This document shows, piece by piece, positions 26,083-32,800 of a stretch of 64,000 nucleotides of DNA. The notes beneath the pieces are model-generated. The model had not been told where the DNA came from. It made no database searches and saw only the letters and a program-made list of their open reading frames with translations. The position numbers were made by a program, and so were the translations under genes. Origin of the DNA: Oopsacas minuta (Eukaryota > Animalia > Porifera); the NCBI GenBank assembly GCA_024704765.1, contig JAKMXF010000338.1:154878-218877 (forward strand). The letters run 5' to 3'. Positions within the stretch are counted from its first letter, which is position 1. Each line of letters begins with the position of its first letter.

Positions 26083-26730
26083 GGGCCTTATTGACTAAAA
26101 TTCCTTGGTCAAATTCTTAGAATTTTGCTTAACTTCAAGTTAAATCCTTAGAATCAGTCTAAGAATTCGAACAATTCTAAGAAAAATATTTAGTGAGGTA
26201 AAGAGGACACTTAGCTTGTCATTTATTCTACTTTTCTATGAAAGTATAATCAATACGCATTTATTTACAAAGAAGATTGTTTATCGGTAAGACAATATGT
26301 TTGATTATCATATCTACATGTTGCAATACCCGCAGCATAGAACTATAGTCGGATTACATACCAAATATATTTAGATGCTATTTCTTGACGTCACTCTGAA
26401 TTGTATTATGACATCAATGAATGTATTTATGTGATTAAATTATCTCTAATATATTTTGAAACATAATAGTGTTGTATCTAAACTAAGGTAAATAAAGTCA
26501 ATGTCTTTTCAGTGACCTCCTGCAAAAATATACGCAATCTATGCAATTTTATCCATTTACATATATTATCATATTTAGTGATAACTATAAATAATAATAA
26601 AATGTTAATTAATTATGATAATATCTTAACAATCGTTCGCATTATGACCACTGAAAAATCGAAAACTCGTTCAAAGAATTTCACTCAGGATGAGATAATG
26701 TCACTCATGGATCTCATTCATCCCAAGTTT
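26083..26730 (+). mobile_element. PIF/Harbinger left end and start of a Myb/SANT-like gene
   Basis: CAG|GGGCCTTATTGACTAA terminus with CTTAG/CTAAG subterminal repeats; MTTEKSKTRSKNFTQDEIMSLMDLI resembles the Harbinger Myb/SANT start. Confidence 0.55.
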
Positions 26731-27294
26731 CGTCACCTGCTACTTTCTCAAATAACCTTCTGGAGTCAGCTCGATCAAACTCAGAGAGCAATTTAGCAGC
26801 GCATTGGACCCTCTTTGCTTTCTGGGCCTGAGTTAGTAAATGCGGCACCCATCGAGCACATATCTTTCGGAATTTCATATTATCATGTACAATAGCTTGA
26901 ACAGTTCCCGTTGAGATCCCGACCGCATCAGCTATCTCCACAAGCTTGATATGTGGGTCTTCTTCAAATAACGCGGATACCTCAAGGATATTTTTGTCAC
27001 TGGCGCTGGAAACTGGTCTCCTATTCTTGCCCCATCTTCAATGGTTACTATACCTCCACGAAAGCGTCTAGCCCAATCAACAACAGTGAAATATGGAAGT
27101 GCTGTAACCTTATAAACTTCCTCTAAATCTTTGTGGACATCTGTTGGTGAAACCTTGAGCAGTGTTCTGATCTTCACAAATGCTCTCTGCTCAATTTCGA
27201 AATCTGTACTTTTGAAGCCATTTAAAATGTTACTATAAAAACTATCAAAGTGTAAATAGGTACGTACAATATTGGAACGGGAAATCAGAATCAA
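26714..27294 (-). pseudogene. mariner transposase N-terminal fragment
   Basis: EQRAFVKIRTLL..SPTDVH HTH, KICARWVPHLLT, AGDETW. Confidence 0.8.
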
Positions 27295-28109
27295 AAACGC
27301 TTTGCATTATTGAATTCAAAATGGATGGATTGTTATTAGAAAATTCAGTTTGATCTGGGTCGAAATATCCCGATCTACAAAATTTGGAATAAAGAATACT
27401 TATGGGACCCCCGTAGTAAATTCTATGGTGCGAAAATTGATAGTTAATTAAAATGATTTGTATAGTTTAGTAGCACAATTTCTATTTTGCGAAATTTGAA
27501 ATCGGTATATTCTTTTGAATAGTTGTTGCAATGTATGGACTTGCTTGGTCTGCACACTGGTTTATGGGCATGCTATAATATAATGTTCTCTTCTGGTTCT
27601 TTACTAAATACGAAATTAAACATAATGAATATGTTGCAGTGGATTAATTACCATTATTATATCATTGTTATCAACATTGTAATTGTTCACCATCCTTTGA
27701 AAAAGTATTTGAGTTGCTAGCATCTAGAAATGAAGGAATATCAATAATAAATATAAAATAATATGACATAATTTGTGATAATATTACAATGTATGCTGAA
27801 GAAAATACTATTAAACACATAAATACTCAAGCACAAGGAAAGATATACTTATCTTCTTGAATACTGCTGTATTATACAATGATTTTGATTCCAAGGTTCG
27901 TCATTATATTACCAATAATGTATTATATGTAAATTCTATATGGAAACATTGTGGGTCTCAAGTTCGAAACACGGACTATATCCTTAATTCCATTGGTGAC
28001 AAATGATGATCCTAAATTCTATAAAAGTACTTTACATATCCATCCGCGCTCTGAGTATATCCCAGTTAACTTGAGAAAATCAGATAACTCGTACACATTT
28101 GTTGCATTT

Positions 28110-30310
28110 ATGATCACCATCAGTGCCTTACCAAATTGTTTCTTAATATTCGTTCCGTTCATCTCAAACCAAACGACAACATCTATTTCCTTTCTCACGA
28201 TGGTTATCATTATGGAATTATCCAATCTATCCATTCTTCTCCTTTTATCGGGAGATATTGAATTGAACCCTGGTCCTACCGGAGGAGAAGAGTTCATGAA
28301 AATTCTCGACGAGAAGAAACGGGCTGATTCAGCCATTAATACATTCTCACCTGAAGAAGTAGAGCAAAGAATCTACACCCTGATATCACAGAAACCTACA
28401 GAAAAAACATGCAAGACAAAAGTGACAAAGGGTTCAGAATAAATTTAAACTTGTTTCATATCAAAGTGTTGAAACCCTATACCTTCGTGAAGCAAACAGA
28501 CACAATGCCAAAAGAGTATTGGTGAGTAATGAAATGTACGAATTCTTAGAAGAATTTCACGTAAAATCACGAACATTCAGGAAGGACAAAATTGTATAAG
28601 AGAGTTACTCAATATTACTTTGGAGTTACTGAAGAACTGTGTGATTTTTATGTCAAAATGTGTCCAACTTGCCATCTAAAAAGTGGAAAGAAATCCACAA
28701 AGTCTGTAGTTACCAAGCCAATCGTATCAAGAAATTACCTGAGCAGAGCTCAAATTGATCTCATAGATTTCAGAGGTATGAATCTGGTGAAAACAGGTCA
28801 CCAGATGGAGTCACACCCTATAAACACCTTTTTGTCTATATTGACCATTTTACCAAAACAATAAACTTGGTCACATTTGTTAAAAAACAACAGAAAATGT
28901 TCGTGATATTTTAATTGAAATATTCTGCGATCAAGGCCCACCTCTAATATTACATTCTGATAATGGAGGGGAATTCTCAAATCGCCTTCTATTCGAAACT
29001 TTGCGAGATACTTGGCCCTCTATAAAAATTGTGCATGGCAAACCCAGGCATCCTGAGTGTTAGGGGACAGTAGAGCGTGTGAATAGAGAAGTTAAAGACG
29101 GATTATTTGCCATGATGCATGATAATAATGATCAATGCTGGGTAAAGTATTTAAAGTCGGTAAATTTAACTACAACACAAGTTACCATACAACCATTCGA
29201 ATGACGCCATTTGAAGCTGTGTATGGCAGACCTCCATTCTTCTGACTCGCCACTCTTAATGTTCCTAAAGAACATTAGGTGTGATTAATAACAAAAACGA
29301 TTTGAAAAACTTTCAACAAACCTCTGTTGCTGATCCAATATCAGCATTTGTTGATGAACTATCTCAACCATCTAACTTGTTTGATAACGAAGTGCCTACA
29401 TATACAGAAGAGTATCTTAATGAACCACAATCTCCATATATATCTAAGTTCCCGCCTATTTCCGACGATTATGAATTCTCAATATTGGATACAGTTCCAC
29501 CTGGCACAATTATCGATGGTATAGAATATAACAGTAATTTTGAAACCCTAACATCAAGTATTCCAGTAATTCTGGAGGATCAAATTAGAGCTCTTGAGTC
29601 AGGTAATTTAGTTTCTGAGAAAGAGTTTCCCATGGACGTCTATCTAGTAGTTCACCAATAGTTTCAAATATAAATCCAGTCAATTCAACTAACTTACTCT
29701 ATGCTGTATGTGAGAATGAAACAAATGGAGGACACTCTTGGCCTGAGTAATGTCGTTTCGTCCACGTACCTTGCGGAATTCAACAAGGGGAAGAGGGATT
29801 TGGGTGCTCAGTGTGGTGTCAAGGTTGTTTTCTCAAAGAAAGGAGTACAAATACCTATCATTTACGAAAAGGAATAAAAAGAAATATAGAAACATTTCAT
29901 GATCGTATGCTAAAGTCAAGTGGGAAAAAATTCAAACCAGCTGAAATCTGTGATACTGTGCTTATACCCATTTCCCGACCTGATAAGATGAGTTCGATTT
30001 GGCCACGCAATCTTATGGGTCATATTATCGACGCACAGGATTCTGTTTATACTGTAGCTACATCACATGGCACTATTTCCTCTGGCTATGCAAGGAATCA
30101 GTTAATGTTTGTCCATCCAGAATCCGTGCAAATGAGTCTTGCCATACTTCTATAGTCAGTGAAAAGGAAGCAATGCAAAGTGCTTCTCTGGGCCTCAGTG
30201 GTTCAGCATGTAGATGTAAGCACTGAGAACACTAAGGTGCCCTTGCAAGAAATCAGGTAGAAGTTGCAACACTAAATGCCATAAGGGTCACACTTGTTTT
30301 AACAAGTTCG
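28110..30310 (+). mobile_element. Ginger2/TDD-type (KRBA2/SCAND3-like) integrase gene, decayed
   Basis: HHCC region (SGRTKLY...CPTC), RAQIDLIDFR, LHSDNGGEFS, GKPRHPEC.GTVERVNRE, YHTTIRMTPFEAVYGR, C-terminal CRCK..CPCKKSGRSCNTKCH; termini not identified. Confidence 0.8.
28200..28277 (+). other. 2A-like (StopGo) ribosomal skipping motif
   Basis: MVIIMELSNLSILLLLSGDIELNPGP matches D(V/I)ExNPG-P with an upstream hydrophobic helix; in frame with the start of the integrase. Confidence 0.8.
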
Positions 30311-30603
30311 CATAACATGCTACTAGTAGAGAGAATAGTCATTACGTATAACACAAGTCATCACTTAATATTTATTAGAACTTTTAAATTGTCATATAAG
30401 TAGTTTATAATAAGAATACAATAAAGATTTCTTGCTCAGTCTCAAAAGTATTTTAAATTGAATAATACAGACACTTCGCTACACGAGTAGTCGAGTAGAT
30501 TATAAATAATTTGGTGTGTTGGACAATTTGGAATTACTATGTAGTAATGGGGCGAAGTTAACAGTTGTAACGTAACTAGATACGAACAAGAGTCTAGTTC
30601 ATA

Positions 30604-31140
30604 CTAGGGCGTTCAATAAGTCTTGCGTGTGATATCATAGAATATGATACAAACACTATACACACTAATTCACTATATTATTTATTCACAGAAATCCCCC
30701 CTGCAGATACACAAAGTTTTAAACTTTCCACCCACTTGTAAACACATTTCTGTGCTCTTCTTCAGGGGATGGATTTGAACTACTTGTACAGGCCCGTTCC
30801 GAGTGGTCGTAATGTGTTAAAATCTTTGCCTTGAAGGTAGATTTTAAGCTTGGGGAATAGCCAAAAATCACACGGAGATAGGTCTGGTGAGTATGGTGGA
30901 TGGGGAAATAATTCTAACACTTCTACATCAAAGAAATATTTGGTAAGCTTAGCTGTTTGGGAACTGGCGTTATCAATTCCAATCTTCATTCCTCAAGTTC
31001 CGGTTTTGGGGCGGTACTTTTCTATATTTTTTACCAAATTTGGAAGCACTTGCTCGGAAAAGAAAGTAGCAGTAACAGCCTTGCCACTCTCACAAGGTAA
31101 TTGCCAGACAATTCTATGACTACTGAAGAAGATTGACTTG
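30604..31140 (-). mobile_element. mariner 3' fragment with one TIR
   Basis: PHPPYSPDLSPCDFWLFPKLK..LQGKDF; terminus CTAGGGCGTTCAATAAG. Confidence 0.75.
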
Positions 31141-31337: not shown

Positions 31338-32800
31338 ATGGAGAATGGTGAACCGCAAACAAGCGTCTGCAAAAGACTAAATATCTCAAAGTCGACGGTG
31401 AATTCAATATGGAAAAATAGGGAAACTCTCAAACGTAGCTATGACTCGTCTGAAATCAGTGTTGACTGTAAGCGGATCCGATCATCGAATTTCACTCAAG
31501 TGGATACAGCTTTACTAGAATGGTTTAAGCAGGCAAGAAATTGTAATATTCCTATAACCGGCAAAATACTGATGGAAAAGTCCCAGTTCTTTGCTACTGC
31601 CATGAATGTTTCAACTTTTAAAGCCACTACAGGTTTCATCGATAGGTGGAAGAGAAGACATTCTATAGGGATGAAACAAATTTCTGGTGAAGAGAATCAG
31701 TTTCAGAGGAGAGCATTCGTCCTTGGTTGGATATCACTCTGCCAGAATTGCTCTTGAAATATACACCAGAAAATATCTACAACGTAGATGAAACTGCGCT
31801 ATTTTACAAGTTACGGCCAGAGAGGACGTTGACTTTCAAAGGAGAAAAGTGTAGTGGTAGTAAGAAACAGAAGGACCGTCTTACAGTGCTTGTTGGGGCC
31901 AGTATGGCTGGTGAAAAGCTTCCACTTCTAGTCATTGGAAAATCTAAGTCACCAAGGTGTTTTGCGGGTATTAGATCGTTACCTTTAGGCTATATTTCTA
32001 ATGCGAAAGCTTGGATGACGGGAAATTTCTTCCAGCAATGGCTGGAAAAGTGGAATAGAAAAATTGTATCCACGAAACGTTCTGTCCTACTCATAATAGA
32101 CAATTGTCCCGCGCACCCTCGTAATCTTGAGCTTTCTAACATTTCTATCAAATTTCTGCCACCAAACACCACTGCAAAGTTACAGCCTTGTCATTAAGGC
32201 ATTATACAATCCCTGAAAGTTCATTATCGACACCAATTAGTGAAGAAGCTACTTTCATCGATGGATGCTAAGGAAGAATTGAAAATAACAGTTCTTGATG
32301 CTATGCAGTGGCTGAAGGTTTCATGGGACAAAGTAACAGCCACGACCATTCAAAATTGCTTTCATCATTGTAGCTTTAGTCTTGGATCAAATACTGCAGA
32401 AATATCAATTGTCTCAGATGAAGGGCCTGAAAGTATTACATATGAGGAATTGAAGAGCCGTGAAATTAATGTTGAAGGTTCATTTGAAGAATATGCTATT
32501 ATTGACAATGACGTCCCTATTTGTGGCATTCTTACAGATAATGAAATTACAGCAATGCTTCAGGGTGACGTTACTGAAGAACCATGTGTAATAGAATATG
32601 ATGTGGATGATAATACTATTGTGTGCCCAAGCGTGTCAGAATATCATGATGCTCTGAAGATTGTTAAGCGCTACGTGACCTGTAATTCCAAAAGCTGTCT
32701 TCTCAATGCTATTAACGAGATGGAAGAACTAATCTATACTTGTAGTGTGAAGCAAAGTTCACTTTCCGATTTTTACACTAGCCAAAAAAAAATAAAATAA
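31338..32800 (+). pseudogene. pogo/Tigger (CENP-B-like, TIGD4/6-like) transposase, frameshifted
   Basis: psq HTH plus CENP-B HTH; NIYNVDETALFY, KDRLTVL, SNAKAWMT, LLIIDNCPAH, FLPPNTTAKLQP. Confidence 0.9.

What the first reader, a model, noticed from the sequence alone, without database searches (positions are those of the whole stretch)
28110..28442. 2A-like StopGo peptide fused in frame upstream of a Ginger2/KRBA2-type DNA-transposon integrase
Seen: ...MELSNLSILLLLSGDIELNPG|PTGGEEFMKILDEKK...; the motif (28254-28277) matches D(V/I)ExNPGP with the usual Leu-rich helix, and the sequence after the Pro is the integrase N-terminus leading into the HHCC and DDE regions. Established: 2A sequences cause ribosomal skipping and are known from RNA viruses, non-LTR retrotransposons and some invertebrate genes, where they can double as signal peptides. 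Inference: translational recoding used by a cut-and-paste integrase element, a context I do not know to be described. It could release a Pro-initiated integrase or partition product between secretory and nuclear fates.
Basis: partly seen in the sequence, partly recalled or inferred. Interest (0 to 1): 0.78.

Follow-up and report, generated by a model that had tools for sequence, protein, structure and literature searches.

The report
Sponge jumping gene with viral skip signal
A broken copy of a cut-and-paste jumping gene in a glass sponge encodes its DNA-inserting enzyme behind a short front protein and a virus-style "skip" peptide, an arrangement kept in related sponges and, as far as I could find, not described for this class of jumping gene.

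Summary
The motif is real. Window 28254-28277 encodes D-I-E-L-N-P-G-P, preceded by a Leu-rich stretch. It lies inside a Ginger2-type DNA transposon (window 27524-30607) of the glass sponge Oopsacas minuta.

This window copy is a pseudogene. The 2A frame stops at 28440, and the integrase continues in eight pieces across all three frames. The 3' end of the element is missing.

The family's ORF starts at an ATG at 27879. It encodes a leader of about 125 residues with a hydrophobic N-terminus, then 2A, then the integrase.

Sibling copies L011 and L015 keep 2A and the integrase N-terminus in one frame. A related 2A-bearing integrase family occurs in three other assemblies, one of them shown to be from a related sponge.

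Across lineages the motif codons differ mostly synonymously, while the flanking codons differ mostly non-synonymously. The Pro after NPG aligns with the start Met of sister elements that lack 2A.

StopGo activity is inferred, not shown. The window's exact 20-mer is listed in a 2026 preprint's library, but its assay class could not be read.

None of the texts I searched describes 2A in a DNA transposon. The scan had already noted this on other copies in the same genome (s1-230919, s1-290541).

The parts
27524..30607 (+). 3'-truncated, decayed copy of a Ginger2-type TIR DNA transposon. Full copies are about 4.05 kb.
   Evidence: Homology to other genomic copies runs 27524/27548 to about 30607. 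The window copy lacks the last ~800 bp and the 3' TIR. Full copy L002 is 4,050 bp with a TAAA TSD.
27524..27610 (+). 5' terminal inverted repeat, with terminus TGTTGCAA (TGTTGCAG in other copies)
   Evidence: Termini found. 27548-27610 matches the opposite end of other copies in inverted orientation. The TIR is 143 bp at 95.8% identity in L002.
27879..28274 (+). Leader ORF from the family's ATG to the Gly of NPG. It has a hydrophobic N-terminus, is interrupted here by a stop at 27930-27932, and carries compensating frameshifts.
   Evidence: ATG to Pro is 399 nt (mod 3 = 0) with 1 stop in the window, and 402 nt with 1 stop in L004. Kyte-Doolittle 15-residue maximum is 2.2-2.4 at the leader N-termini.
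28218..28277 (+). 2A/StopGo-like 20-mer; core D-I-E-L-N-P-G-P at 28254-28277; predicted skipped bond between Gly 28272-28274 and Pro 28275-28277
   Evidence: Sequence read directly. Conserved in L002, L003, L004 and L006, and as D-I-D-Q-N-P-G-P in the older subfamily L013. The same 60-nt/20-mer is listed in Table S3 of bioRxiv 10.64898/2026.06.17.732966.
28275..28442 (+). Integrase N-terminal region still in frame with 2A, ending at a stop (28440-28442) caused by a frameshift in this copy
   Evidence: Aligns with the N-termini of P0015, P0002 and P0011. L011 and L015 read through this point.
28426..29275 (+). Integrase pseudogene: HHCC zinc-finger region and DDE catalytic core, split over three frames
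   Evidence: tblastn pieces 28426-28887 (frame 3), 28571-28786 (frame 1), 28884-29201 (frame 2) and 29144-29275 (frame 1) against P0002. Pfam rve and rve_3 on the sibling ORF from L002.
29679..30306 (+). Integrase C-terminal half: SCAND3-type zinc finger, SH3-like segment and Cys-rich tail, in three frames
   Evidence: tblastn pieces 29679-30104, 30092-30223 and 30226-30306. Pfam PF23663 Znf_SCAND3, E = 4.4e-07, on the L002 ORF.

Best explanation
The window holds a dead, 3'-truncated copy of a Ginger2-type cut-and-paste transposon of Oopsacas minuta.

In the family's working form, one ORF starts at an ATG about 350 nt inside the 5' TIR. It encodes a fast-evolving leader of about 125 residues with a signal-peptide-like hydrophobic N-terminus. 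A Leu-rich helix and the 2A core S-G-D-I-E-L-N-P-G-P follow. After that comes a complete integrase with an HHCC finger, a DDE core, a SCAND3-type finger and a Cys-rich tail.

Inferred mechanism:
- The ribosome skips the Gly-Pro bond (StopGo) and releases the leader ending in NPG.
- Translation continues from Pro, giving an integrase of the same extent as the Met-initiated integrase of sister elements that lack 2A.
- The free integrase can then go to the nucleus.
- Any unskipped product keeps a hydrophobic leader and would probably be diverted or reduced, so the module also limits the integrase dose.

Shown here: element type, anatomy, in-frame arrangement in sibling copies, and amino-acid-level conservation of the motif across lineages. 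Inferred: skipping itself, the targeting consequences and any dose control.
For: Element type:
- Termini are TGTTGCAG.
- The TIR is 143 bp, and 4-bp TSDs are TAAA in L002 and TTAA in L008.
- Pfam gives rve plus Znf_SCAND3 on the sibling ORF.
- P0069, which begins with what I read as a SCAN-type N-terminal domain (not scanned against Pfam), is among the top hits.

Family feature:
- The motif is present in 5 of 12 copies examined. It has decayed by 1-3 changes in six others and is D-I-D-Q-N-P-G-P in the older subfamily copy L013.
- 2A and the integrase N-terminus form one open frame in L011 (223 codons, through the zinc finger) and in L015.

Other genomes:
- P0015 (ERZ25072740) occurs as two copies 99.55% identical, with 298-bp TIRs and the same TGTTGCAG terminus.
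- P0031 (ERZ25766962) has an ATG-initiated 117-codon leader, then S-G-D-I-E-S-N-P-G-P, then the integrase.
- P0033 (ERZ25069837) carries a decayed motif.
- An XAP5 gene next to P0015's locus is 83% identical to the O. minuta gene, so that assembly is from a related sponge.

Selection on the motif:
- In the 10 motif codons, lineage pairs differ at 4-5 codons synonymously and 1-3 non-synonymously.
- In the 14 codons upstream, between-assembly pairs differ at 1-4 codons synonymously and 10-11 non-synonymously; the two O. minuta subfamilies differ at 0 and 4.
- Nucleotide similarity between the 2A families begins just before the S-G-D core.

Junction and leader:
- The start Met of the 2A-less relatives P0011, P0165 and P0002 aligns with the residues right after NPG.
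- Leader frames stay open for 117-126 codons, although the stop-codon fraction per codon is 0.056-0.061. The chance of that is 3e-4 to 1e-3.
- The motif has 6 Leu at positions -19 to -10. This is the pattern the 2026 preprint links to its skipping and reduced-abundance classes.
Against: - No functional data exist. No fully intact copy from ATG to the integrase stop was found in any genome examined.
- The young copies L028 and L029 have the ATG in a different frame from 2A; the two frames meet at a C7 run. They also share a frameshift near the C-terminus.
- The leader shows no third-codon-position excess of substitutions between O. minuta subfamilies. It has no detectable sequence conservation between lineages, so its coding status rests on frame openness alone.
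- In the preprint's assay, Leu-rich peptides with the same core fall in both skipping and non-skipping/reduced classes.
- The tree leaves a trichotomy, so a single origin of the module is not proven.
Confidence: 0.6

Rival explanations
1. The motif is kept by selection but works mainly as a translational brake or a hydrophobic targeting/anchor segment. It would cause ribosome stalling, reduced protein abundance or ER diversion, with little true Gly-Pro skipping. Most integrase would then be made as a leader fusion or from a downstream start.
For: The 2026 preprint reports that poly-Leu eukaryotic 2A-likes (3-6 Leu at positions -19 to -10) are enriched for reduced protein abundance. It also reports that most retrotransposon-associated 2A-likes fall in reduction classes. 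Similar Leu-rich peptides with a D-I/V-E-L-N-P-G-P core are classed both ways in its Table S6. The leader N-termini are strongly hydrophobic.
Against: All residues of the canonical core, including the final Pro, are conserved across lineages. The changes are synonymous or fall at positions the motif allows (I/V, x), apart from E to D in the older copy L013. This fits the requirements of skipping better than those of a generic hydrophobic segment. The junction sits exactly at the native integrase N-terminus.
Confidence: 0.22
2. The leader and 2A are a neutral relic. The module was picked up once from a 2A-bearing retrotransposon or host gene and carried along without function. The integrase is translated independently, for example from an internal start or after splicing.
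For: The leader evolves fast and shows no codon-position signature. The same genome holds other 2A-like motifs in unrelated repeats that could have been donors. Sister Ginger2 elements do well without it; L046 encodes an intact 713-residue ORF.
Against: The motif codons show mostly synonymous change while the flanks are replaced. No in-frame Met lies between 2A and the zinc finger at a conserved position in the 2A-bearing lineages. Leader frames stay open far longer than chance allows. Leader DNA is not found outside this family in the genome.
Confidence: 0.13
3. The juxtaposition is an accident of this locus: a LINE or other fragment carrying 2A happened to land upstream of an integrase pseudogene.
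For: The window is a nest of transposon fragments, with mariner-like and pogo-like ORFs on both sides. The window copy itself is broken.
Against: The same leader-2A-integrase order lies inside the TIRs in more than 10 copies on different contigs. It also occurs in three other assemblies. The Pfam scans of the window 2A ORF, two adjoining window fragments and the L002 sibling ORF gave no reverse-transcriptase or endonuclease match.
Confidence: 0.02

Closest known systems
N-terminal 2A-like sequences of APE-type non-LTR retrotransposons (Ingi/L1Tc, CR1, L2, Rex1, Crack; Odon et al. 2013, PMC3708506)
   Same: A canonical D(V/I)ExNPGP motif with a Leu-rich upstream helix. It sits in the N-terminal region of a transposable element's enzyme ORF, in marine invertebrates, and follows a short upstream polypeptide.
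   Different: Those are class I elements, where the downstream protein is an endonuclease/reverse transcriptase. Here the element is a class II TIR transposon and the downstream protein is a DDE integrase. The paper's text does not mention integrase, DNA transposons or sponges.
2A-like dual signal sequences of sea-urchin NOD-like receptors (Roulston et al. 2016, PMC4981915)
   Same: A hydrophobic N-terminal segment plus 2A in front of a protein that works outside the secretory pathway. Skipped product goes to the cytoplasm and unskipped product to the exocytic pathway.
   Different: There the 2A peptide itself is the N-terminal signal. Here 2A lies about 115-140 residues downstream of a separate hydrophobic N-terminus, and the cargo is a transposon enzyme. 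Targeting was not tested here.
Ginger2/Tdd DNA transposons and their domesticated relatives SCAND3 and KRBA2 (Bao et al. 2010, PMC2836005; Llorens et al. 2012, PMC3575427)
   Same: TGTNR termini, TIRs of 50-180 bp, 4-bp AT-rich TSDs, an HHCC plus DDE integrase-type transposase and a SCAND3-type zinc finger.
   Different: Described Ginger2 elements start the transposase with its own Met. Neither paper's text hits mention a leader or recoding signal. Among the 150 best representatives of 25,758 homologues, only the three from this sponge clade carry NPGP.
Catalogue of 4,218 non-viral 2A-like peptides (bioRxiv 10.64898/2026.06.17.732966)
   Same: Its Table S3 contains the window's exact 60-nt coding sequence and 20-mer. 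The source is probably the 110-residue hypothetical protein annotated on window 28110-28439.
   Different: The preprint discusses ORF1p/ORF2p retrotransposon proteins, one Ty3-like RT, RapGEF, ankyrin-like and death-domain proteins. Its main text contains no occurrence of 'integrase', 'transposase' or 'transposon'. The annotated 110-residue protein stops before the integrase domains, so the context was not visible from it.

Membership tests
2A / StopGo recoding peptide | C-terminal core motif D(V/I)ExNPG followed by P | tested here: met
   D-I-E-L-N-P-G-P at 28254-28277. D-V-E-S-N-P-G-P in P0015 and D-I-E-S-N-P-G-P in P0031.
2A / StopGo recoding peptide | Upstream ~10-residue hydrophobic, Leu-rich, helix-prone tract at about positions -19 to -10 | tested here: met
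   6 Leu at positions -19 to -10 in the window 20-mer. Hydrophobic tracts occupy the same place in P0015 and P0031. The criterion is taken from the preprint. Helicity itself was not computed.
2A / StopGo recoding peptide | Lies inside one ORF, in frame with a downstream protein | tested here: met
   Met in sibling copies L011 and L015 and in P0015 and P0031. Not met over the full length in the window copy, which is frameshifted.
2A / StopGo recoding peptide | Demonstrated skipping of the Gly-Pro bond | not testable with these tools
   The exact 20-mer is in the library of a high-throughput assay. The stored copy of the results table is cut before its row.
Ginger2 DNA transposon | Terminal inverted repeats of about 50-180 bp with TGTNR termini | tested here: met
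   TGTTG termini. TIR of 143 bp at 95.8% identity in L002. TIR of 298 bp in the related element L028, which is longer than the published metazoan range.
Ginger2 DNA transposon | 4-bp target site duplication, AT-rich target | tested here: met
   TAAA in L002 and TTAA in L008; 3 of 4 bases match in L009; TAAA in L046; TACC in L045. L003 and L006 show no matching TSD.
Ginger2 DNA transposon | Transposase with an H2C2 zinc finger and DDE core, and no reverse transcriptase in the element | tested here: met
   Invariant H, H and C columns plus a nearly invariant second C in alignment A1. Pfam rve, rve_3 and Znf_SCAND3, with no RT match, on the 478-residue sibling ORF from L002 and three window fragments. 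One ORF fills the ~4-kb element.
Ginger2 DNA transposon | Phylogenetic placement with reference Ginger2 transposases rather than Ginger1, Gypsy or Polinton | tested here: inconclusive
   No Repbase references were available. Indirect support: the SCAND3-specific Pfam finger, and a 1,325-residue top hit, P0069 (34% identity), with what I read as a SCAN-type N-terminal domain. GPY/F and YPYY motifs were not specifically scanned.

The most novel reading that the evidence does not exclude
A clade of Ginger2 cut-and-paste transposons in glass sponges expresses its integrase by StopGo recoding. One ORF yields a small signal-bearing leader protein sent to the secretory pathway and a Pro-initiated nuclear integrase. 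Skipping efficiency sets how much active integrase a cell gets. This would be the first natural use of 2A recoding by a class II (DNA) transposon. It would also show that the leader-2A cassette can move between unrelated mobile-element classes.
Probability: 0.45. Interest if true: 0.7.

Novelty: new variant of a known kind. Interest (0 to 1): 0.6.

Why it matters
2A/StopGo recoding is known from RNA viruses, non-LTR retrotransposons and some invertebrate host genes. If the inference holds, this finding extends it to a DNA transposon whose enzyme must reach the nucleus.

The finding also offers a natural comparison. Sister elements with and without the module occur in one assembly: P0033 (L045) carries it and P0002 (L046) lacks it. 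That pairing could show what an N-terminal leader plus skip signal buys a mobile element, whether dose control, dual targeting or an extra protein.

It also illustrates an annotation trap. The public 110-residue 'hypothetical protein' from this locus put the peptide into a 2A catalogue without its integrase context.

Tried and rejected
- **MELSN start.** It depends on a one-base deletion unique to the window copy.
- **LINE-fragment chimera.** Rejected by the copy comparison and the leader-only genome search.
- **General Ginger2 feature.** Only 3 of the best 150 representative homologues carry NPGP, and all 3 belong to the sponge clade. An N-terminal word search found only P0015, P0031 and P0032.
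- **Junction pattern elsewhere.** A degenerate pattern for motif plus junction gave 0 hits in JGI metagenome contigs and 0 in IMG/VR. These collections hold little sponge DNA, so the blank says little.
- **Codon-position test of the leader.** Inconclusive.
- **Reading the peptide's assay class.** Failed, because the stored Table S6 is cut just before its row. The Cell Reports 2025 paper has no supplements held.
- **Second 2A-bearing repeat.** Pfam gave no match. The Atlas search gave only a weak MULE lead.
- **Tool limits.** The look-up of encoding contigs closed, so P0150's contig was not fetched. I redid that step by reference and left out the peptide-coordinate look-up.
Full report
**What is at the coordinates**

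Window 28254-28277 reads GAT ATT GAA TTG AAC CCT GGT CCT, which is D-I-E-L-N-P-G-P. It is preceded by L-S-I-L-L-L-L-S-G. The ORF listed for 27951-28442 ends at a TAA at 28440-28442.

The window is AT-rich (about 36% G+C) and full of eukaryotic transposon fragments. A 100%-identical public protein names the organism as the glass sponge Oopsacas minuta. The assembly has 61.5 Mb in 365 contigs.

A degenerate DNA pattern for D(V/I)ExNPGP hits this genome 9 times, against 0 for the reversed-pattern control. Five of the hits are copies of the element studied here. The motif is therefore not a chance match.

**The element**

The region 28100-30300 has about 9 long relatives in the genome at 87-94% identity, plus older ones at 75-83%.

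- Homology among copies runs from window 27524/27548 to about 30607.
- The 5' end reads TGTTGCAG in most copies and TGTTGCAA in the window.
- The first ~60-140 bp recur inverted at the far end of full copies. In L002 the TIR is 143 bp at 95.8% identity and the element is 4,050 bp.
- L002 is flanked by TAAA/TAAA and L008 by TTAA/TTAA. L009 matches at 3 of 4 bases. L003 and L006 show no matching duplication.
- The window copy lacks the last ~800 bp and the 3' TIR.

The protein of a sibling copy (L002, a 478-codon open frame) matches Pfam rve, rve_3 and the SCAND3-type zinc finger PF23663. Homologues run into the tens of thousands (25,758 at E <= 0.001). One top hit, P0069 (1,325 residues), begins with what I read as a SCAN-type N-terminal domain; I did not scan it against Pfam.

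These features match the published definition of Ginger2: TGTNR termini, 50-180-bp TIRs, 4-bp AT-rich TSDs and an H2C2 plus DDE transposase (PMC2836005). SCAND3 and KRBA2 derive from that clade (PMC3575427). I could not place the protein on a tree with Repbase references.

**State of the window copy**

tblastn with the intact relative P0002 finds the integrase in eight pieces spread over all three frames between 28326 and 30306. This copy is therefore a pseudogene. Only 55 codons after the Pro remain in frame with 2A.

**Is 2A part of the family's ORF?**

Yes.

- The canonical motif is intact in the window copy, L002, L003, L004 and L006.
- It has decayed by one to three changes in L005, L007, L009, L011, L015 and L017. 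This is what neutral decay of dead copies would give.
- It reads D-I-D-Q-N-P-G-P in the older subfamily copy L013.
- In L011 one open frame of 223 codons runs from upstream of the (decayed) motif through the integrase N-terminus and the C-x2-C of the zinc finger. L015 likewise reads through the point where the window copy stops.

**Where the ORF starts**

No other copy has an in-frame Met within tens of codons of the motif.

All long copies share an ATG at the position of window 27879. From it to the Pro is 399 nt in the window, with one stop at 27930-27932 and compensating shifts. In L004 the distance is 402 nt with a single stop.

The family therefore encodes a leader of about 125 residues before 2A. 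The leader's N-terminus is strongly hydrophobic, with a Kyte-Doolittle 15-residue maximum of 2.2.

**Relatives in other genomes**

A word search with the L002 ORF found P0015, which carries S-G-D-V-E-S-N-P-G-P ahead of a homologous integrase.

- Its two loci (L028, L029; ENA ERZ25072740) are 99.55% identical over 3.57 kb. They have 298-bp TIRs and the same TGTTGCAG terminus.
- A neighbouring XAP5 gene is 83% identical in protein to the O. minuta gene, so the host is a related sponge.
- P0031 (ERZ25766962, L044) has an ATG, a 117-codon leader that begins with a run of Phe and Leu, then S-G-D-I-E-S-N-P-G-P and the integrase, all in one frame.
- P0033 (ERZ25069837, L045) carries a decayed motif inside an element with TIRs and a TACC duplication.

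The 'M' of P0015 is a GTG chosen by a prokaryotic gene caller. In L028 the 2A frame is open for 126 codons without an ATG. An ATG that opens a hydrophobic peptide lies in another frame, and the two frames meet at a C7 run. I cannot tell whether that offset is a mutation, a homopolymer assembly error or slippage.

**Evidence for selection on the motif**

I laid out the codons of four lineages side by side: O. minuta young, O. minuta old, ERZ25072740 and ERZ25766962.

| Region | Synonymous codon differences per pair | Non-synonymous codon differences per pair |
|---|---|---|
| 10 motif codons (S-G-D-x-E-x-N-P-G-P) | 4-5 | 1-3 |
| 14 codons upstream, between-assembly pairs | 1-4 | 10-11 |
| 14 codons upstream, the two O. 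minuta subfamilies | 0 | 4 |

The non-synonymous changes in the motif fall at I/V, at the free x position, or are E to D in the old copy.

Nucleotide similarity between the three ENA families is limited to the TIR tips and to the stretch from just before S-G-D onward. The leader between them is not alignable.

Even so, leader frames stay open for 117-126 codons, where the stop fraction is 0.056-0.061 per codon. The chance of that is 3e-4 to 1e-3. A codon-position test on the leader within O. minuta was inconclusive.

**The junction**

In alignment A1 the start Met of the 2A-less relatives aligns with the residues immediately after NPG in the 2A-bearing proteins: M-S-R-x-E/Q-F in P0011, P0165 and P0002 against P-T-R/G-x-D/E-E-F.

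P0002 comes from an apparently intact element (L046). It has a 713-codon ORF, TIRs and a TAAA duplication, and it sits in the same assembly as P0033. The leader plus 2A is therefore an add-on placed exactly in front of a complete integrase.

A tree of the N-terminal 250 columns puts three groups in one clade with 96/96 support, as an unresolved trichotomy:

- the O. minuta family with P0073;
- the P0015/P0031/P0033 family;
- the 2A-less P0165/P0002/P0011 group.

This is compatible with one gain, with or without a loss, and does not exclude two gains.

Among the 150 best representative homologues, only P0015, P0031 and P0150 carry NPGP. The module is thus a peculiarity of this sponge clade and not of Ginger2 in general.

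**Mechanism**

What is shown is the anatomy and its conservation. What follows from established knowledge of 2A (PMC3708506, PMC4981915) is this:

- A motif of this form can make the ribosome release the upstream chain after Gly and resume at Pro.
- An upstream hydrophobic signal then sends only the unskipped product to the exocytic pathway, and the skipped downstream product stays cytoplasmic.

Applied here, StopGo would give a leader ending in NPG and a Pro-initiated integrase of native extent. I rate actual skipping at roughly 0.6-0.7.

The 2026 preprint links 3-6 Leu at positions -19 to -10 with skipping and, often, reduced protein abundance. The window peptide has six. A dose-limiting role is therefore plausible, and it is the main rival or complement to simple separation.

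**What is already public**

The window's exact 60-nt coding sequence and 20-mer appear in Table S3 of that preprint. This is probably because the ORF 28110-28439 is a 110-residue protein in NCBI/UniRef.

The stored results table stops alphabetically just before this peptide, so I could not read its assay class.

That preprint's main text contains no occurrence of 'integrase', 'transposase' or 'transposon'. The same holds for Cell Reports 2025 and PNAS 2026, and Odon 2013 contains no occurrence of 'integrase' or 'DNA transposon'. A search for '2A-like' together with 'transposase' returned only vector papers and unrelated uses. Within this library the context is undescribed.

Earlier notes of this scan (s1-230919, with a follow-up, and s1-290541) report the same arrangement on other copies in this genome. 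My analysis agrees with them.

**Limits**

- No fully intact copy was found. Activity, transcript structure and targeting are untested.
- The look-up of encoding contigs closed.
I replaced it by a reference-based run and left out the peptide-coordinate look-up.

**Verdict**

- Novelty: a new variant of a known kind, namely 2A in a class II transposon.
- Interest: 0.6.

Noticed in passing
G000:C308:317978-318000, C332:1186739-1186761, C332:1254635-1254657 (loci L040, L041, L043): A second, unrelated repeat family (about 3.3 kb shared, 88-91% identity) carries C-G-D-V-E-V-N-P-G-P after a hydrophobic stretch, and a stop follows four codons later. Its leader contains a W-R-x-x-I-G-x-F-like motif. 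That motif resembles the leaders of Halichondria and Elysia 2A proteins shown in the preprint's Table S7. Pfam gave no match, and the Atlas search gave only a weak MULE lead.
   Followed up: partly
G000:C323:194122-194144 (- strand; L042): A single further canonical motif, F-G-D-I-E-I-N-P-G-P, follows a long hydrophobic stretch. Its context was not identified.
   Followed up: no
L046:2472-6064 (ENA ERZ25069837): An apparently intact 2A-less sister Ginger2 element. It has a 713-codon ORF starting at an ATG, TIRs with a TGTTGCAG terminus and a TAAA target duplication. It is a natural comparison partner for the 2A-bearing family in the same assembly.
   Followed up: partly
L028:6165-6244 (identical in L029): A predicted 80-nt phase-0 intron (GTAAGT ... 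TTTAG) in the linker of the 2A-bearing integrase. The next frame is open for 104 codons and matches P0002 residues 405-434. The prokaryotic gene call for P0015 ends inside this intron.
   Followed up: partly
L028:4700-4800: The ATG opening a signal-like peptide and the 2A frame are offset by one base and meet at a C7 homopolymer run; a second C7 run lies 27 nt downstream. L028 and L029 showed no differences in this stretch. Whether this is a mutation, an assembly error or slippage is open.
   Followed up: partly
window 28110-28439: This ORF is a 110-residue protein in NCBI/UniRef. It is a gene model made from a transposon pseudogene fragment, and it is probably how the peptide entered the 2A-like catalogue without its integrase context.
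   Followed up: yes
window 26714-27294 (-), 30780-30989 (-), 31338-32800 (+): Mariner-like ORF fragments lie on both sides of the Ginger2 copy. Downstream is what looks like a pogo/Tigger-type transposase in three ORFs (read by eye, not scanned). The Ginger2 copy ends abruptly at about 30607 in this transposon nest.
   Followed up: no
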